Sequence record: LR535910.1
Length of the DNA stretch: 64,000 nucleotides
Direction: 5' to 3' (one strand)
Positions within the stretch are counted from its first letter, which is position 1, and every line of letters begins with the position of its first letter. This document shows, in pieces, positions 871 through 21,860 of this stretch. Made by a program: the position numbers and the translations under genes. Below the pieces are notes generated by a model. The model had not been told where the DNA came from, searched no databases, and saw only the letters and a program-made list of their open reading frames with translations.

Positions 871-1266
871 GTGAAATTGATTATGCCTAAAACCGTTCCT
901 AATCAGGATATGGTTACGACTACACTGTTTTCTGAATCATTACGTAACTCTGTACGTCAGACCGCTTCACGTCTAGACGTAGCGGTTGAAGAACTCGACC
1001 CAGGGGTTTTCATGAAGTATGCGTTTATTGCAGAAGGTTACGCGATCGCCCTGAGTTATGCGCGGTATGTCGATGACGTGACAGAAGCTAAACGTTATTT
1101 AGAAGGCTGTTGTCAAGTTTTCCGTGAAGAAATCACCGAGATGGAGATGGTTGACCGCGGCTTACCTGAATTTGTAAAGGTGGGTTACGATAAGCTGTTG
1201 CAATCCATCGCGGATGAAATCGGACGTCGCGGGTTAACTGTAGTGCACAGCGCTACACTGCACTAA
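871..1266 (+). CDS. Hypothetical protein, 131 aa
   Basis: AAGGAG RBS before the GTG start; terminator directly downstream. Confidence 0.75.
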   Translation: MKLIMPKTVPNQDMVTTTLFSESLRNSVRQTASRLDVAVEELDPGVFMKYAFIAEGYAIALSYARYVDDVTEAKRYLEGCCQVFREEITEMEMVDRGLPEFVKVGYDKLLQSIADEIGRRGLTVVHSATLH

Positions 1267-1280
1267 CACCGTACGAGTAG

Positions 1281-1318
1281 GCTACCACACGATCATATGT
1301 GTGGTAGCTTATTTTTTT
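1281..1318 (+). terminator. Rho-independent terminator
   Basis: GCTACCACAC-N8-GTGTGGTAGC stem followed by TTATTTTTTT. Confidence 0.8.
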
Positions 1319-1334: not shown

Positions 1335-1868
1335 ATGGCAGACCGCTATCAGCCCGACCTAACACTCTCGTCGAAAGCGCTTGTCGTGGCGTTGATTAAT
1401 CACGATAACGGCTTGTCATTATCGCCTGACGAGATTGTGATAAGCGGGGTAGGGCCTATCGACTTAGGTGTTGAAAGTGCCCGTACCACGCAAGCGTACA
1501 TTGCAAAAGCACGTAAACCTAACGGTAAGAAGATTACCGTCTATTACGACCGTCTAGCTGCTAATAAGATTATCGACCCGCAAGGACCGATACTGGTTAC
1601 TGTAGCTCCCGGCGACACCTATGCTGATTTAGCGACAGTTGTAAACCAGTTGTGCGGTTTAAACTTGTCACGTGAGGACATCTCGACAGGGGTTATTACA
1701 CCAACAAACGAGCCGTTGATTGCACCGATGAGTGACGATTCACCGGCTTGGACGGCTACCTTTACATTCACGGCGTTTAATGAAAAAGAAGCTGTGGCAA
1801 GTCTGGATGAAGAAACTGTTTTATGCATCGGTGATGATGCAGTGTTAACCTACGGAGACGATGCATAA
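1335..1868 (+). CDS. Virion structural protein carrying the anchor domain shared with the 10.9-34.2 kb paralogues
   Basis: GGAGG RBS before ATG 1335; SKALVVALINHDN...RTTQA...VYYDRL matches the family pattern INxxN...RNT...YDRL. Confidence 0.7.
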   Translation: MADRYQPDLTLSSKALVVALINHDNGLSLSPDEIVISGVGPIDLGVESARTTQAYIAKARKPNGKKITVYYDRLAANKIIDPQGPILVTVAPGDTYADLATVVNQLCGLNLSREDISTGVITPTNEPLIAPMSDDSPAWTATFTFTAFNEKEAVASLDEETVLCIGDDAVLTYGDDA

Positions 1869-2341
1869 TGGCAACTGTAGTCAAAAAGAAACGTTTGCAT
1901 GAACTCGATTCTTACAACGGTGATAAGTCGAGCGCGGTAGCGCTTATCAGCGTTGATGAAAAGGAGTACAAACTTCCTCTCAGTGAAATCGGCGGTGGTG
2001 GGGCAGATGCAAACCCTATCCAAAACTTATCCGGTGCTGACGGTGTCGTTGAAATAGATCCCAATATTGCGGACGACTTCATCATCCGTTTAGGTGACCC
2101 CACCACTGCGCTTTCTATCACACCTATTACCGACCCGGTTCCTGGTACGCGATATGAGTTATTACTGACGCTACGTCAGGGTACCGGTGCAAACAAAATC
2201 ACCTGGCCGGCTTCGGTTAAATGGCCTAACGGTGCAGAACCTCCGTTATCGTACACGCTAGACGCCGAGGATGTGTTGTCGTTGTCATCTACGGATGGCG
2301 GTACAACCTGGAAAGGGGCCATTTGCGGAACAGGATACTAA
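1868..2341 (+). CDS. Putative tail fibre or appendage connector protein
   Basis: C-terminal LTLRQGTGANKITWPASVKWPNG..P.....DVLSL.S.DGGTTW pattern is typical of phage fibre-associated domains; translationally coupled to both neighbours. Confidence 0.55.
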   Translation: MATVVKKKRLHELDSYNGDKSSAVALISVDEKEYKLPLSEIGGGGADANPIQNLSGADGVVEIDPNIADDFIIRLGDPTTALSITPITDPVPGTRYELLLTLRQGTGANKITWPASVKWPNGAEPPLSYTLDAEDVLSLSSTDGGTTWKGAICGTGY

Positions 2342-2344
2342 GCC

Positions 2345-5300
2345 ATGCGCAAATTTAAAATCTCTGCTAAACGACATGCGTTGAACTATGCGATGTCGCT
2401 GGCTTACGGACATCAGGACTTTGTTCGCCGCAATACCGGTCTCACAAACGACGCCCACAAAGACCATTATCTGATTAACCCAGAAGGGGTGCTATCTAAT
2501 AACCGGCATTTCATTGCTGACTCCATGGCTGTGTATCAACCTAACGGTGACGCCACCACAGAAGGCCAATCGTTGCTGATTATTGGCTACTGTCACATGT
2601 ACATTGCTACCAAAAACCAGATGTGGTTAGATGCGGCGATTCGTGCATGGGAAGCGTACGCTACCTACTATTACGCAGGTCAGGCCATTCCTGAGTCACC
2701 GCAACGTTGGATTTGTAACTGGCTAGTTAACGGTAAAGAGCCAGTGCTGGCAGACTATCCGGTGCATCCGACCGAGCCAACCCACGGTGGTTATAAGTGT
2801 GTACCGGTAACGTTTACGAACGGGCGTTGCCAGATACCCCAAGGCGCACCATTCTTTGGTGAATATCTGAACAATTTCTTTTCTGCGCATCGTGGCCATC
2901 CTACTTGGGGTGCGGTTAATGCCGACGTACAGAAAATTAAGGAATCGGAAGACGGGTTAATTGACTGGTCTAAAGTCCCTGATTACTTAATCGTCAATCC
3001 AGAGAAACCTTACGATGTAAAAGCGTGGGTGGACTGGAACACGATGCTAAACGACCCAACCGGATATACACCAATGTGGGGCGGTTCTACCTCGAAAGGT
3101 CCGCGGTACGAACCTGACTGGTTTGTTGTGTGGACGGGTGAGAAGGTTCAAGACGGCGATGTCATCGAATCCGGTTTACCTGATGCCCAGAAAGGAACCG
3201 TACAATTAAAGGACACTAGTATTAACGGTGTATATTTGATTAACTACGCTTCCCAGGTACCTGTAGAGCACGGCGGATATTTGTTTGACCGCAATGAGCC
3301 GTGGCACAACCGTCCGGTTCATACCCCGTTAAAAGGGTCTGTTAACCAGATGGGTAACGCGGCAGATGCGGAAGTGTGGTTTATTGATGCCTGTTATCTG
3401 CTCTGGCGTATCACGGGTGAACCGCGCTATAAAGCCGCATTAGACTCTGTGTTCTATACAGCGCACGAGTACACGTATATCGATGCGAAGGACAAGTTTT
3501 TCCGTCGTTCTAAGCTAGCCGAAACGCCATTTACAGATGGTATCTCGTACGACTATAAATACCCCAGCACTGTTGAGGTCGCTTACAGTCGTGATGAAAA
3601 TGGTGATATTGTGTTCCGTTCTGAGGAAGCTGTGCAGAACTTTATGGAACAGCAAGCCGTGCGTTTCAGGATAAACAGTCAATCGAAGTTACGTGTGACG
3701 TATGGCGGTGTTTGCGACAACGGTGATGCACTTGCGTGTAAAGTGATGGTGGATATTAACCCCGTCAAAGCGGATACTGAAGAAGTAAACTGGTACGGCT
3801 GTACGCTTCCGGGATCAACATCGATGGAAGTAGAACAGCATGACATCGATTTAGGGCATCTGGCCAGAATGACCAATCCGGCCAACGGCGAAGATTACAT
3901 CATTGCCGATGCGCGAGCATGTTCGGACTACGGTGGGTGTACGTGGCAGGAGAAGTTTGAGAACAACATTTACGATGGTCGTTCAGGCACAATCGTAGAA
4001 GCGTTATTCCCGAACGACGATGCGGGTTTCATTATCGGTTTCTGGTTAACCGATGCCGGCGTTGCACCCCCGCAGTCAATTGTCTATCGTGCCGATGCTG
4101 ATTTCAACTTCCGTTTCGAAGATACCGACAAGTGGCGTTGGTGGTGGATGTTGCCCGCGACTAACGGGGAATGGAAACAGGTTATTATTCGCCCTGAAGA
4201 CGCAACACTCTCGGGCTATCAACCTGACCACGATACCGACGTCGAACCAAAACCGGCTGCGCCAAACTATACAACTATCGATCAGGTAACCATACTGCCC
4301 GATTCGGCTGTGGAGAATGCGCACTTTAGCTGGTATTGCGTAAACGATGTTCCGCCACTGTTTAATGGAGACGATGGTTGGACGTTAACGTTCCGTATTG
4401 TAATTCGGGGAGGTTCTGCATTTACGGGTAAAGTGGGCGATTGTACGATAAAAGATTACCGTCTTGACTCGCTCGCGTATTGTCCAGGTACGATACCGTT
4501 CTCGAACATTTATACGGAAGGAACGTATCAGCTAGGTGCATGGCACGGGATGCCGTATCCTGGCTATCAGTATCCGTTTATGTACACCATACACACCGAT
4601 GATCGCTACAAAGTCTGGCTCTTAAATCAGATTCGGTTTATGCACGATTCACAAACCAACTACCAGGCGCAGCTAGGTGAGTTAGGTCCAGGTTGTGCGG
4701 CGTATATTTGGAACCGTTGGGATAACTACACTTACGGACCGGCAGATACGTGGACAACGTTCCATTGGGGAGATGGACATCCGTGGGCAGGTTATCAGCC
4801 ACGCGCGTATAACGCCGCTGCGCGTTGTTGGTACGAATTAGTTGTGCGTGGTAAAGAGGTTCCACCTGAGCTAGTAGTGTACGTTGAAAATTGGGCTAAG
4901 TGGCTCGTAGGGTTCTTAGACCGCTTTGACAACCACACCCCGAATGAATTCCCTACGGCACCAAATAAACCGGTATGGGTAGAGAATGATTTCACAGCAC
5001 ATATGTGTGCGCTCTGGATAGCAGGCAGTGCTTACGCAGCAATGGCCGGTTGTACGGTGGATGGGTTAGACCGAATTATGGATATGGGAATGAAGGAGAT
5101 GGGTGATAACTTCACTGTCACCGACATTCCTGGGAAAGCCATTAACGGTGCCTGGTCTCCATGGGCAAATCCCACCACGGATAACGGTCAGGCTTTTGGG
5201 TTTTATACTGGAGAAGCGATGCGCGCAATCGGGTTGTATCTCCTCTATAAAGAACACGGCGCGGGACATGATATTTATCGTGACTTGGCAATCCCCGACC

Positions 5301-5362
5301 ACACAACAGCCTCGCTCGATATAACGTTTACTATCCCAGACGATCCGCTCGAAACTAATTAA
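2345..5362 (+). CDS. 1005-aa putative virion-associated glycoside hydrolase (GH8-like alpha/alpha barrel with inserted carbohydrate-binding-like region)
   Basis: TTEGQSL resembles GH8 TSEGQSY; NAADAEVWFIDACYLLWRITGEPRY resembles BcsZ [25 protein letters not shown]; Trp-rich beta-like middle region. Confidence 0.6.
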   Translation: MRKFKISAKRHALNYAMSLAYGHQDFVRRNTGLTNDAHKDHYLINPEGVLSNNRHFIADSMAVYQPNGDATTEGQSLLIIGYCHMYIATKNQMWLDAAIRAWEAYATYYYAGQAIPESPQRWICNWLVNGKEPVLADYPVHPTEPTHGGYKCVPVTFTNGRCQIPQGAPFFGEYLNNFFSAHRGHPTWGAVNADVQKIKESEDGLIDWSKVPDYLIVNPEKPYDVKAWVDWNTMLNDPTGYTPMWGGSTSKGPRYEPDWFVVWTGEKVQDGDVIESGLPDAQKGTVQLKDTSINGVYLINYASQVPVEHGGYLFDRNEPWHNRPVHTPLKGSVNQMGNAADAEVWFIDACYLLWRITGEPRYKAALDSVFYTAHEYTYIDAKDKFFRRSKLAETPFTDGISYDYKYPSTVEVAYSRDENGDIVFRSEEAVQNFMEQQAVRFRINSQSKLRVTYGGVCDNGDALACKVMVDINPVKADTEEVNWYGCTLPGSTSMEVEQHDIDLGHLARMTNPANGEDYIIADARACSDYGGCTWQEKFENNIYDGRSGTIVEALFPNDDAGFIIGFWLTDAGVAPPQSIVYRADADFNFRFEDTDKWRWWWMLPATNGEWKQVIIRPEDATLSGYQPDHDTDVEPKPAAPNYTTIDQVTILPDSAVENAHFSWYCVNDVPPLFNGDDGWTLTFRIVIRGGSAFTGKVGDCTIKDYRLDSLAYCPGTIPFSNIYTEGTYQLGAWHGMPYPGYQYPFMYTIHTDDRYKVWLLNQIRFMHDSQTNYQAQLGELGPGCAAYIWNRWDNYTYGPADTWTTFHWGDGHPWAGYQPRAYNAAARCWYELVVRGKEVPPELVVYVENWAKWLVGFLDRFDNHTPNEFPTAPNKPVWVENDFTAHMCALWIAGSAYAAMAGCTVDGLDRIMDMGMKEMGDNFTVTDIPGKAINGAWSPWANPTTDNGQAFGFYTGEAMRAIGLYLLYKEHGAGHDIYRDLAIPDHTTASLDITFTIPDDPLETN

Positions 5363-5368
5363 GTGTAT

Positions 5369-5410
5369 ACCAGCTATCCTTCGGGGTGGCTGGTACGCTT
5401 TATTTTATTT
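5369..5410 (+). terminator. Rho-independent terminator
   Basis: ACCAGCTATCC-TTCG-GGGTGGCTGGT stem (with G-U pairs) followed by a T-rich tract. Confidence 0.7.
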
Positions 5411-20363: not shown

Positions 20364-21860
20364 ATGGGGTTGTATACAGAACCTTCAATGGAACTGCTCT
20401 GCCAACAAATTGTGCGTGACAATCCCAGTTTAGCAGGAAAAATCACCGCCGACTCCATTGGGGTCAGGGGTGTTCCTGTTGCGAAAAACGTTAACGGACG
20501 AAACACACAGATTACGTTGGTAGGTAAACCCGGTAAAGGATTTGCTGGGGAAATAACGGTCTATTACGACCGGTTGAATCTGGCCAGTCTATTTAAGTCT
20601 GGCCCGAAGATGGCGAGTATTCCACGTAGCGCACAAACCCATGCGGAAGCGTTACCGGCGTTCAATGAATTGAACGGGTTGAACTTAACCGCGAGTGATA
20701 TCACCAGTCCAAACGTTGCATTAATGAAATACGCTACGCCGGAAACTGTAACTCTGACGGCGCACGCTAACTCCTTGTGTTATACCGGGTCATGCAAGAT
20801 GACCTATGTTTACGAACCGATTGCGATGTATCCGAAGTCGGGTCCTGGGCCAAAAGGATTAATGGCTGGTAATGAGTTATACGGATTCTTTGGGCTGGTA
20901 AGCGCGGAAGAGTTATTCACATCTGATGAAATGGTGTATGCCCTCTATAACGGCACCACCTGGCCTAACCGCTACGCTATCAAGTGGCTCAAATTCTTTC
21001 TGAATGGGGCGGTAGTGTTTGTTCCGACCCGTGCGATTTGCAACGTTACCTGGGCAGACCTGTACAACAAGGGTGCAATATTTGATTCCGGAGACGCAGG
21101 ACCTCGCCCGAAGTCGACTTACACACCTGTCGATGTTGAACAGTTGAAATACATGGTAAAACGGGATGATGAAGGAACGCATTATTTCAGAATGTCTATC
21201 CCGTATTACACCGAGAACGCCGCCGCGCCTGATTGGAGTAAACCGCCGTCAATCACCTCTATCCTGTCACTGACCAGCAAATTGGGGTCGGTGAACGTAT
21301 ATGGGGAGTGGGGAACTCTTAGCACGACTGATGCTAACTTCCTGGATTACGTGTGGTTACGACACCAGTTCGGTGCCGACCAAGCGTATTACCAGTCTAT
21401 CAGTGCGAGCTATCGTTCAAACACCTACATCTACACCTCTTCTGGCTTTTGGCCAATCCTGGAGATGTTTGATGTTGCCAATGAACCTGTGCCGTTGATT
21501 GACGAAGGTGCAGAATTAACATGGGCACCGTCCGTGGTTACTCTGACGGACATCGACCAAAATGAATCGCTTCGTGTGGTGCCTATTACGGAAACCTCCG
21601 CCGCAGCGAATCCACGTCCGTTAGTTTTCAACACCGACAACACCGAATCTGCCACCCCTGCCTGGCTGCGGGAAGCGTCATCAGACTCACCACGTCCTCT
21701 GCTTGCCGCGACGGACAATGATGAACGTGCATATTCCGTCGCGGTAACAGGCATGGCTAGCGTTAAGATTAGACCGATTATTCTCACGACTGACCAAATC
21801 GCCCAACCTTCAAAAATTACTCTGGGCGATACTAACGGTGAGTTGGATGGATTCCAATAA
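20364..21860 (+). CDS. Cassette 2 gene A
   Basis: MGLYTEPSMELLCQQIVRDNP; SGPGPKGLMAG...GFFG; ends DTNGELDGFQ. Confidence 0.75.
   Translation: MGLYTEPSMELLCQQIVRDNPSLAGKITADSIGVRGVPVAKNVNGRNTQITLVGKPGKGFAGEITVYYDRLNLASLFKSGPKMASIPRSAQTHAEALPAFNELNGLNLTASDITSPNVALMKYATPETVTLTAHANSLCYTGSCKMTYVYEPIAMYPKSGPGPKGLMAGNELYGFFGLVSAEELFTSDEMVYALYNGTTWPNRYAIKWLKFFLNGAVVFVPTRAICNVTWADLYNKGAIFDSGDAGPRPKSTYTPVDVEQLKYMVKRDDEGTHYFRMSIPYYTENAAAPDWSKPPSITSILSLTSKLGSVNVYGEWGTLSTTDANFLDYVWLRHQFGADQAYYQSISASYRSNTYIYTSSGFWPILEMFDVANEPVPLIDEGAELTWAPSVVTLTDIDQNESLRVVPITETSAAANPRPLVFNTDNTESATPAWLREASSDSPRPLLAATDNDERAYSVAVTGMASVKIRPIILTTDQIAQPSKITLGDTNGELDGFQ

What the first reader, a model, noticed from the sequence alone, without database searches (positions are those of the whole stretch)
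2345..5362. Virion-linked 1005-aa protein with split GH8 (cellulase-like) catalytic motifs
Seen: TTEGQSL (near nt 2555) and NAADAEVW...W...EPRY (near nt 3355) resemble the two conserved GH8 segments of BcsZ-type endoglucanases, separated by about 260 extra residues; a Trp-rich middle region resembles a carbohydrate-binding module. It is translationally coupled to an anchor-family gene and a fibre-connector gene, all between two terminators inside an early-gene region. Inference: a mobile appendage module that degrades cellulose or another biofilm or surface glucan.
Basis: partly seen in the sequence, partly recalled or inferred. Interest (0 to 1): 0.65.

Follow-up and report, generated by a model that had tools for sequence, protein, structure and literature searches.

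The report
Six-hairpin glycosidase-like tail protein with adaptor
The 1005-residue gene is the jumbo-phage SPN3US gp124 virion protein: a predicted sugar-cutting (alpha/alpha)6 barrel interrupted by sugar-binding domains, belonging to a widespread and already annotated phage tail family (phi92 gp141, Goslar gp92) whose activity and substrate have never been tested.

Summary
ORF 2345-5362 encodes a 1005-aa protein with TTEGQS (E73) and NAADAE (D341), both invariant across the family.

The window is a Seoulvirus jumbo Salmonella phage, 100% identical to SPFM phages. The protein is the ortholog of SPN3US gp124, which published mass spectrometry found in virions and did not assign to the head.

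An AlphaFold2 model (pLDDT 87.9) is a complete (alpha/alpha)6 barrel. The best match is CPF_2247 (GH126) at Z 32.1. E. coli BcsZ and other GH8 chains score Z 23-25. The barrel is split by two inserts. The second insert is two nested CBM-type beta-sandwiches (CBM11, CBM4; Z 11-12).

It is not a GH8 member by sequence, and no catalytic base could be placed.

The family occurs in 541 phage records, including phi92 gp141, rV5 gp42 and Goslar gp92. It is almost always preceded by a small adaptor gene of the gp123 type, with a shared C-terminal domain and a lineage-specific N-terminus. Here the adaptor follows a DUF7941 anchor gene.

The module is real and mobile, but a glycosidase role was already predicted for phi92 and Goslar. 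Catalysis and substrate, cellulose included, remain untested.

Earlier notes of this scan describe DUF7941 fibre modules in other phages. None covers this gene.

The parts
1275..1314 (+). Terminator-like hairpin (17 pairs) plus T-run, upstream boundary of the three-gene unit
   Evidence: sequence
1335..1868 (+). gp122 ortholog: small DUF7941 module protein (the 'anchor'). The probable start is ATG 1335 after GGAGG; the mechanical ORF starts at TTG 1317
   Evidence: Pfam DUF7941 E 5.4e-18 and PHROG 2935 virion structural protein; SPN3US gp122 is 534 nt
1868..2341 (+). gp123 ortholog: 157-aa adaptor. Its C-terminal ~85 aa (nt ~2075-2338) is the domain found directly upstream of gp124-type genes in unrelated phages
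   Evidence: PHROG 9017 'tail fiber protein' E 1e-59; 9 of 9 phage lineages and 24 of 38 bacterial-genome loci carry this domain directly upstream; SPN3US gp123 detected in virions
2345..5362 (+). gp124 ortholog, 1005 aa: split (alpha/alpha)6 glycosidase-like virion protein
2345..2680 (+). Barrel helices 1-3 (aa 1-112), with invariant E73 (nt 2561-2563) at the N-terminus of helix 72-89, in the TTEGQS motif
2681..3349 (+). Insert 1 (aa 113-335): beta-rich domain between helices 3 and 4. Its fold class was not determined, because it was not folded alone
   Evidence: secondary structure; no Pfam hit
3350..3490 (+). Barrel helices 4-5 (aa 336-382), with invariant D341 (nt 3365-3367) and E343 at the N-terminus of helix 340-357
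3491..4462 (+). Insert 2 (aa 383-706): two nested CBM-type beta-sandwiches. The outer one is aa 383-511 plus 673-706. The inner one is aa 512-672 (nt 3878-4360) and holds the Trp-rich stretch 595-610
   Evidence: fragment model pLDDT 88; CBM11 1v0a Z 12.1, CBM4 1gui Z 11.1, CBM61 2xom Z 11.0; 1v0a Z 12.5 on the full model
4550..5269 (+). Barrel helices 6-12 (aa 736-975), with invariant Y738, Q742, R791, R820 and near-invariant E957
5270..5359 (+). Poorly conserved C-terminal tail (aa 976-1005)
5368..5395 (+). Terminator-like hairpin (12 pairs, TTCG loop) plus T-rich tail, downstream boundary

Best explanation
The gene encodes the Seoulvirus gp124 tail-periphery virion protein. Its core is a six-hairpin (alpha/alpha)6 barrel of the GH8/GH48/GH126 type. 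Two domain insertions lie in loops that lead into inner helices, which is the active-site face of such barrels. One is a beta-rich insert; the other is a pair of nested CBM-like jelly rolls.

Most likely it binds a host surface or biofilm polysaccharide through the CBM-like domains. It probably cleaves that glycan with E73 as general acid and D341/E343 holding the -1 sugar, which would help the phage reach the outer membrane.

It is hung on the virion by the product of the preceding gene, gp123. The conserved C-terminal domain of gp123 would dock the enzyme. Its N-terminus would connect to gp122, a DUF7941 module of the filament and peripheral-baseplate system of chimalliviruses.

Shown here: the ORF, the motifs and their invariance, the predicted folds, the conserved adaptor-plus-barrel gene pair, and virion presence of the SPN3US ortholog (published mass spectrometry).

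Inferred: catalysis, the substrate, the gp122-gp123-gp124 contacts and the position on the virion.
For: Identity: the DNA is 100% identical to SPFM phages and 96.5% to SPN3US. The gene is SPN3US_0124.

Virion presence: gp124 (113.7 kDa) gave 39 unique peptides at 48% coverage, and gp123 was also detected. Neither is marked as head.

Fold: the model has pLDDT 87.9 and pTM 0.84. 3ren_B (CPF_2247, GH126) scores Z 32.1, rmsd 2.9, with 329 of 332 residues aligned across model residues 7-966. P. putida GH8 4q2b scores Z 25.4, E. coli BcsZ 3qxq/9b87 Z 24, CelA 1cem Z 24.1, and GH48 chains Z about 24.

Active-site-like residues: E73, Q75, D341, E343, D348, Y738, Q742, R791 and R820 are invariant down to 26% identity. 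Most of them, the two acids included, sit at or just before the N-termini of alternate helices.

With the inserts removed, hhalign puts TTEGQS on BcsZ TSEGQS (E55) and NAADAE on SASDAD (D116) in one collinear alignment.

CBM-like insert.

Adaptor: a gp123-type C-terminal domain lies directly upstream in 9 of 9 phage lineages (E 1e-15 to 1e-24). The adaptor N-terminus is the T7 tail-fibre N-domain in podophage ISAO8 and Tail_spike_N in rV5. Serratia P2-like prophages fuse the barrel protein to baseplate gpI. Goslar gp92 fuses it to a DUF7941-like N-terminus.

The Goslar preprint reports DUF7941 filaments and DUF7941 proteins with predicted glycoside hydrolase and carbohydrate-binding domains, gp92 among them.
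Against: No sequence method places the protein in a characterised glycoside hydrolase family. Pfam, NCBIfam and PDB sequence searches were blank, and hhalign against a BcsZ profile is marginal (E 0.039, probability 1.3%).

Fold similarity to GH105, GH88, GH76 and sugar epimerases is nearly as high (Z 25-27.6). Apart from the single top hit, the fold alone does not pick GH8/GH126.

The residue tentatively at the GH8a base position (818) varies among Q, E and F, so no catalytic base is identified.

No model coordinates were available, so no residue-level superposition or cleft geometry could be checked.

No family member has published enzymology that I could find.

Confidence: 0.6

Rival explanations
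1. The protein is a non-catalytic receptor-binding protein. The barrel and the CBM-like domains only bind a surface glycan, lectin-like, and the conserved acids serve binding rather than hydrolysis.
For: No catalytic base could be assigned, and position 818 is variable. There is no sequence membership in any GH family. In podophage ISAO8 the homologue follows a T7-fibre-type adaptor and looks like the main receptor-binding element.
Against: The canonical general-acid Glu and the D-x-E pair are invariant from Salmonella to Vibrio phages at 26-30% identity. Pure binding sites usually drift more between hosts. Two dedicated CBM-like domains already provide binding.
Confidence: 0.23
2. It is an enzyme with different chemistry on the same scaffold. 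Examples are an unsaturated glycuronyl hydrolase (GH88/GH105-like), a GH76-like mannanase, a lyase or a sugar epimerase.
For: GH105 4xuv scores Z 27.6, GH76 6shm Z 27.0, YteR Z 25.6 and cellobiose 2-epimerases Z 25. These are as close as the GH8 chains. The ISAO8 record annotates its homologue as a mannosidase-type enzyme.
Against: The best hit by 4.5 Z units is GH126 CPF_2247. The TEGQS and A-D-A-E motifs, at the helix-2 and helix-4 N-termini, reproduce the GH8/GH126/GH48 shared Glu and Asp. I did not see a GH76-type adjacent Asp-Asp pair among the invariant residues.
Confidence: 0.12
3. It is a purely structural peripheral baseplate protein whose enzyme-like fold is a relic.
For: In rV5, phi92-like and P2-like genomes the gene sits among baseplate wedge genes. 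It is highly conserved, unlike typical serotype-specific depolymerases.
Against: Invariant polar residues concentrate at the presumed active-site face. The gene is absent from many relatives of these phages and moves between lineages with swapped adaptors. That pattern fits an accessory module, not a core structural part.
Confidence: 0.05

Closest known systems
Phage phi92 gp141 / rV5 gp42 family (PHROG 2871 'tail protein')
   Same: Full-length homology: PHROG 2871 E = 0 and 1506 bits; 41% identity over 96% of the query to the phi92-like Paula copy and 26% to the rV5 copy. Both are preceded by a gp123-type gene (phi92 gp140, rV5 gp43). phi92 gp141 is annotated as a potential tail fibre protein with glycosidase activity or a carbohydrate-binding module.
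   Different: Here the pair is coupled to a DUF7941 gene in a jumbo chimallivirus rather than embedded among baseplate wedge genes. No member has been characterised biochemically as far as I could find.
Goslar gp92 (chimallivirus DUF7941 protein with predicted glycoside hydrolase and carbohydrate-binding domains; bioRxiv 10.64898/2026.04.21.720040)
   Same: The same barrel protein (37% identity over about 970 residues), in another nucleus-forming jumbo phage and linked to the DUF7941 filament system.
   Different: In Goslar the DUF7941-like module is fused to the N-terminus and no gp123-type domain is detectable. Here three separate genes do the job. The two copies are not each other's closest relatives.
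CPF_2247 of Clostridium perfringens (GH126; PDB 3ren)
   Same: It is the best structural match: Z 32.1, rmsd 2.9, 329 of 332 residues aligned. The Glu and Asp shared by GH126, GH8 and GH48 correspond to E73 and D341.
   Different: Sequence identity is 8% and there is no sequence-level hit. The GH126-specific Arg three residues after the Asp is Val here. CPF_2247 is a single-domain barrel without inserts.
BcsZ / GH8 endoglucanases (PDB 3qxq, 4q2b, 1cem)
   Same: An (alpha/alpha)6 barrel at Z 23-25. The motifs are similar, TSEGQS (E55) and SASDGDVW (D116), at the same helix N-termini.
   Different: The Pfam GH8 profile does not match. About 570 extra residues lie in two inserts. The GH8a base position is not conserved. 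GH8 enzymes are periplasmic or secreted bacterial enzymes, not virion parts.
Branched receptor-binding systems with adaptor domains (T7 gp17 N-domain; CBA120/G7C Tail_spike_N)
   Same: The adaptor upstream of the barrel gene carries these known attachment domains in ISAO8 and rV5. This implies a similar plug-in logic.
   Different: The shared C-terminal docking domain of gp123 has no Pfam family and no solved relative. The cargo is a barrel enzyme-like protein rather than a beta-helix tailspike.

Membership tests
GH8 (Pfam PF01270 / CAZy GH8) | Significant sequence match to the family profile | tested here: not met
   No PF01270 hit for the whole protein at E <= 1 or for the barrel pieces at E <= 10. 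The same model finds E. coli BcsZ at 6e-162. hhalign of the insert-free family profile against 20 BcsZ sequences gave E 0.039 and probability 1.3%.
GH8 (Pfam PF01270 / CAZy GH8) | (alpha/alpha)6 barrel fold | tested here: met
   Predicted model: 4q2b Z 25.4, 3qxq and 9b87 (BcsZ) Z 24, 1cem Z 24.1, each covering 319-329 residues.
GH8 (Pfam PF01270 / CAZy GH8) | General-acid Glu in the S/T-E-G-Q motif at an inner-helix N-terminus | tested here: met
   E73 in TTEGQS is invariant, lies at the start of helix 72-89 and aligns with BcsZ E55. The role of E55 is from my knowledge of the BcsZ literature.
GH8 (Pfam PF01270 / CAZy GH8) | A-[ST]-D-[AG]-D signature Asp pair | tested here: inconclusive
   A-A-D341-A-E343-V-W: the first Asp is invariant and the second acid is an invariant Glu. 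Several other positions of the PROSITE-type pattern, as I recall it, are not matched.
GH8 (Pfam PF01270 / CAZy GH8) | Catalytic base Asp (GH8a: BcsZ D243 type) | tested here: inconclusive
   The tentative equivalent, position 818, is Q, E or F across the family. The alignment there is unreliable and no coordinates were available. E957 or D793 could serve instead; this is untested.
GH126 | Invariant Glu84, Asp136 and Tyr194 (shared with GH8/GH48) plus the GH126-only Arg139 and Tyr307 (PMC7479077) | tested here: not met
   The Glu and Asp equivalents are present (E73, D341) and a conserved Tyr is plausible (Y738). The residue three positions after the Asp is V344, not Arg. There is no sequence hit to 3ren in the PDB search.
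phi92 gp141 / PHROG 2871 tail protein family | Full-length sequence homology | tested here: met
   PHROG 2871 E = 0, 1506 bits, residues 1-993. tblastn found 541 phage records, 520 of them covering at least 80% of the query.
Virion-associated polysaccharide-degrading enzymes (depolymerases) | Physical presence in the virion | tested here: met
   Published mass spectrometry of the SPN3US ortholog: 39 unique peptides, 48% coverage, present in three preparations, not assigned to the head. This is taken from the literature and was not measured here.
Virion-associated polysaccharide-degrading enzymes (depolymerases) | Demonstrated glycan cleavage | not testable with these tools
   No enzymology was found for any family member.
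DUF7941-linked fibre modules of chimalliviruses | A DUF7941 module in the same protein or operon | tested here: met
   gp122 ortholog: DUF7941 E 5.4e-18, one-base overlap with the gp123 start. Physical linkage is untested.

The most novel reading that the evidence does not exclude
The phi92 gp141 / SPN3US gp124 proteins may form an uncharacterised glycoside hydrolase family. It would be related to clan GH-M in structure but outside GH8, GH48 and GH126. It would travel between phage lineages as a plug-in cassette with a universal docking adaptor. Its 45-60% identity across phages of Salmonella, Erwinia, Pseudomonas, Halomonas and Acinetobacter would mean it attacks a glycan shared by many Gammaproteobacteria rather than a serotype-specific capsule or O-antigen.
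Probability: 0.35. Interest if true: 0.65.

Novelty: new member of a known kind. Interest (0 to 1): 0.42.

Why it matters
This is one of the most widespread tail accessory proteins of phages infecting Gammaproteobacteria. It is present in 541 phage records, including the model or well-studied phages SPN3US, Goslar, phi92 and rV5. Yet it has no assigned enzyme family, substrate or solved structure.

This work adds four things that make the protein directly testable:
- the fold is a GH8/GH126-type six-hairpin barrel;
- candidate acid residues are named (E73, D341/E343);
- two nested CBM-like domains are inserted next to the presumed cleft;
- a conserved docking adaptor precedes it, with interchangeable N-termini (T7 fibre N-domain, Tail_spike_N, a P2 gpI fusion, DUF7941 coupling).

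If the protein is active on a broadly shared glycan, it could help explain the broad lysis ranges reported for rV5 and phi92-like phages. It would also be a candidate biofilm- or envelope-glycan-degrading enzyme. The adaptor would be a natural handle for understanding how phages swap host-recognition modules.

Tried and rejected
- Pfam, NCBIfam and PDB sequence searches of the whole protein, of a 40-sequence profile and of four separate pieces gave nothing meaningful.
- hhalign of the family profile against BcsZ alone gave probability 0.14%. Against a 20-sequence BcsZ profile, with and without the inserts, it gave E 0.039-0.081. The motifs align but the score is not significant.
- The BcsZ word search returned only homologues at 60% identity or more, so the GH8 profile was shallow.
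- Foldseek on the full model returned only weak, long beta-sandwich alignments (TM about 0.1), because the barrel is split. The non-Foldseek search (VIA-align wide) was needed.
No binding test exists.
- I looked for a docking peptide shared between the gp123 N-terminus or the gp122 C-terminus and other ORFs of the window. None was found.
- No paralogue of gp123 or gp124 is in the window. gp122 has one weak DUF7941 paralogue hit.
- gp122-like genes are absent from the 2.5-kb flanks of all 38 bacterial-genome loci.
- ESM Atlas scores were 0.81 or lower, so they are leads only: C5-epimerase, GH9 and CBM_4_9 clusters.
- The Schwarzer 2012 phi92 paper is not held. Its content is cited only through record notes and a review table.
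- Insert 1 (aa 113-335) was not folded alone, so I make no statement about its fold.
- I first read locus L004 as siphophage-like. Its E217_gp31_N gene and the S144 annotation show it is an S144-like myophage.
Full report
**What the window is.** Megablast of nt 2345-5362 finds 35 phage records. Ten SPFM Salmonella jumbo phages match at 100%, and SPN3US matches at 96.5%. The genome is therefore a Seoulvirus, an SPN3US-type nucleus-forming jumbo phage. In SPN3US the gene is SPN3US_0124, annotated 'tail-associated protein'. It is preceded by SPN3US_0122 and SPN3US_0123. RefSeq labels these three genes virion structural protein, tail fiber protein and tail protein.

**The observation.**
- The ORF is intact and encodes 1005 aa.
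- TTEGQSL occupies residues 71-77, and NAADAEVW occupies residues 338-345.
- In a 40-sequence alignment of homologues at 45-84% identity, E73, Q75, N338 and D341 are invariant.
- In an 18-sequence alignment that reaches down to rV5 gp42 at 26% identity, E73, Q75, D341, E343, D348, Y738, Q742, R791 and R820 stay invariant.
- The two acids are 268 residues apart here, against 61 in BcsZ.
- The three genes are tightly packed: a TAATG overlap and then a 3-nt spacer.
- Terminator-like hairpins at 1275-1314 and 5368-5395 bracket them.

**Sequence-level identity.**
- Pfam, NCBIfam and PDB sequence searches are blank for the protein and for its family profile.
- PHROGs places it in phrog_2871, 'tail protein' (E = 0).
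- The upstream gene products hit phrog_9017 'tail fiber protein' (gp123 ortholog) and Pfam DUF7941 (gp122 ortholog, E 5e-18).

**Fold.** An AlphaFold2 model built on the 40-sequence alignment has mean pLDDT 87.9 and pTM 0.84. Its long helices lie at:
- 2-29, 72-89 and 92-109;
- 340-357 and 360-378;
- 756-777, 817-834, 841-860, 885-901, 908-921 and 952-971.

Beta-rich regions fill residues 113-335 and 383-706.

Foldseek gave only weak beta-sandwich alignments, because the barrel is discontinuous. The search that does not rely on Foldseek gave a clear answer:

| Match | Family | Z | Note |
|---|---|---|---|
| 3ren_B, CPF_2247 of C. perfringens | GH126 | 32.1 | rmsd 2.9; 329 of 332 residues aligned across model residues 7-966 |
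| 4xuv | GH105 | 27.6 | |
| 6shm | GH76 | 27.0 | |
| YteR | GH105 | 25.6 | |
| 4q2b, P. putida | GH8 | 25.4 | |
| CelA 1cem | GH8 | 24.1 | |
| PssZ 6r2m | GH126 | 23.5 | |

The second look adds E. coli BcsZ itself (3qxq, 9b87, 3qxf) at Z 24 with about 320 of 338 residues aligned, and GH48 cellulases at Z about 24.

The barrel is there, assembled from residues 1-112, 336-382 and 736-975.

**Is it GH8?** Not by the family's own criterion.
- The Pfam GH8 model finds BcsZ at 6e-162. It does not match this protein or its barrel pieces.
- Profile-profile comparison with a BcsZ profile is marginal (E 0.039, probability about 1%). Once the inserts are cut out, though, it does align both motifs collinearly onto BcsZ E55 and D116.
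- Against GH126, the Glu and Asp shared by GH126, GH8 and GH48 are present. The GH126-only Arg three residues after the Asp is Val344 here.
- The GH8a-type base (BcsZ D243, from my knowledge of that literature) would fall near residue 818, at the start of helix 817-834. That position is Q, E or F across the family.
- So the acid and the sugar-holding Asp are conserved, but the base is unassigned. E957 (near-invariant) and D793 are candidates.
- Most of the invariant polar residues, the two acids included, lie at or just before the N-termini of alternate helices. That is where six-hairpin glycosidases build their active site.

**The inserts.** Both inserts lie in loops that lead into inner helices (3 to 4 and 5 to 6), on the presumed catalytic face.

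I folded residues 383-735 separately, with a 27-sequence alignment cut from bacterial-genome loci. The model has pLDDT 88 and pTM 0.82. It is two nested jelly rolls:
- The inner domain (residues 512-672) matches CBM11 (1v0a, Z 12.1, 141 of 170 aligned), a laminarin-binding CBM (8qx6, Z 11.1) and CBM29.
- The outer domain (383-511 plus 673-706) matches CBM4 (1gui, Z 11.1), CBM61 (2xom, Z 11.0), the Xyn10A CBM (4qpw), CBM70 and a CBA120 tailspike domain.
- Nearly every hit is a carbohydrate-binding module.
- The Trp-rich stretch (595-610, W599 invariant) lies in the inner domain.

Insert 1 (113-335) was not examined alone.

**Virion association.** In the SPN3US proteome (PMC5694885, Supplementary Tables 1 and 3):
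- gp124 (113.7 kDa) was identified with 39 unique peptides and 48% coverage, and it appears in all three preparations compared.
- gp123 (16.5 kDa) is also present, and gp122 appears in one preparation.
- Neither gp124 nor gp123 is marked as a head protein.
- The mass-normalised spectral count of gp124 is 0.64, against 0.93 for the 12-copy portal. This suggests a low copy number.

**The family and its adaptor.**
- tblastn finds the protein in 541 phage records, 520 of them near full length.
- These include phi92-like phages (Paula gp175 = phi92 gp141), rV5 (gp42), Ounavirinae of Erwinia and Salmonella, S144-type myophages, Asteriusvirus jumbo phages, the T7-like podophage ISAO8 and 157-kb Vibrio phages.
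- A scan of bacterial genomes gave 38 loci. All are in Gammaproteobacteria, apart from one metagenome bin labelled Bacillota and another labelled only Pseudomonadota.
- In 9 of 9 phage lineages sampled, the gene directly upstream ends in the gp123-type domain (E 1e-15 to 1e-24). The same holds in 24 of 38 genome loci.
- The N-terminus of that small protein is lineage-specific. It is the T7 tail-fibre N-terminal domain in ISAO8 and Tail_spike_N in rV5 gp43.
- Serratia P2-like prophages dispense with the adaptor and fuse the barrel protein to the N-terminal part of baseplate protein gpI (1097-aa ORF).
- Goslar gp92 fuses it to a divergent DUF7941-like N-terminus and is flanked by two DUF7941 genes. 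It has no detectable gp123-type domain.
- A quick maximum-likelihood tree groups the window's protein with Erwinia Ounavirinae, Brenneria and Acinetobacter copies (SH-aLRT 100). It does not group with Goslar gp92, which is 37% identical on a long branch.
- The module therefore moves between phage types and is re-fitted with a local attachment piece.
- The DUF7941 coupling seen here is not found next to the 38 bacterial-genome copies.

**What was already known.**
- phi92 gp141 has been described since 2012 as a potential tail fibre protein with glycosidase activity or a carbohydrate-binding module. I could read this only through record notes and a review table.
- The Proteus phage 7 record calls the ortholog 'glycosyl hydrolase'.
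- The April 2026 Goslar preprint describes DUF7941 filaments. [quoted passage not shown]
- I found no enzymology or solved structure for any member.
- New here, as far as I can tell:
  - the specific fold assignment, a GH8/GH126/GH48-type barrel with the invariant acid Glu and Asp;
  - the nested CBM pair;
  - the near-universal adaptor gene with interchangeable N-termini;
  - the three-gene DUF7941-adaptor-barrel arrangement of Seoulvirus.

**Mechanism and odds.**
- Most likely (0.6): gp124 is an accessory glycan-binding and glycan-cleaving head. It would hang through gp123 on a DUF7941 module at the baseplate periphery.
- A binding-only role: about 0.23.
- Different chemistry on the same scaffold: about 0.12.
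- A purely structural role: about 0.05.
- The substrate is unknown. The 45-60% identity between copies in phages or prophages of Salmonella, Erwinia, Pseudomonas, Halomonas and Acinetobacter suggests a broadly shared glycan rather than a serotype-specific one. This is an inference. Cellulose is one candidate among several.

**Earlier notes of this scan.** They describe DUF7941 fibre modules elsewhere in this window and in other jumbo phages. They agree with the anchor reading but did not cover this gene. I treated them as leads only. One of them suggested a plug-and-socket docking peptide, and I could not find one here.

**Verdict.** This is a new member of a known, already annotated but uncharacterised family, of moderate interest.

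Noticed in passing
L026:1973-5266 (Serratia proteamaculans chromosome); also L024, L025, L027, L028, L030-L032, L036: In Serratia P2-like prophages the barrel protein is a 1097-aa fusion. It has about 175 N-terminal residues of baseplate protein gpI (PF09684), lies directly after a Baseplate_J-like gene and before a 621-aa gene, and has no separate gp123-type adaptor.
   Followed up: partly
L057:3602-7198 (-) (Goslar_00092): Goslar gp92 (1198 aa) is the same barrel protein with an N-terminal extension of about 260 aa. That extension gives only a sub-threshold DUF7941 hit (E 0.047). The flanking genes 91 and 93 are clear DUF7941 proteins.
   Followed up: partly
L013:3142-6736 (Yersinia podophage ISAO8, Autographiviridae): In this T7-like podophage the 'tail fiber' gene is only a T7 gp17 N-domain plus the gp123-type domain (269 aa). 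The following 930-aa barrel protein is probably its main host-recognition element.
   Followed up: partly
proteins P0017-P0021, P0029: Variants of about 1690 aa of the family carry Big_2 (PF02368) domains in addition to the full barrel protein. I did not check where in the protein they sit.
   Followed up: no
window 20442-20708 (+): This is the only other place in the window resembling the gp122 DUF7941 protein (32% identity over 91 aa, E 2e-7). It lies inside the triplicated cassette region noted by an earlier finding.
   Followed up: no
window 871-1266 (+): A 131-aa ORF just upstream of the first terminator matches only PHROG 17719 (unknown function, E 2e-67).
   Followed up: no
L052:3491-5050 (Scandinavium hiltneri): This copy has about 170 extra residues inside the CBM-like insert 2 (520 aa against about 350), which suggests a further nested domain.
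   Followed up: no
L037 (MAG labelled Bacillota, 34-kb contig): A 47%-identical copy with an upstream gp123-type domain sits in a bin labelled Bacillota, while every other named locus is gammaproteobacterial. It is probably a mis-binned phage contig.
   Followed up: no
phage records MG065674.1 and MG065654.1: Records named Campylobacter phage A140 and C15 (135-141 kb) carry a copy that matches the query over the same residues and at the same identity (about 26%) as the rV5-like coliphage copies. The host label looks doubtful.
   Followed up: no
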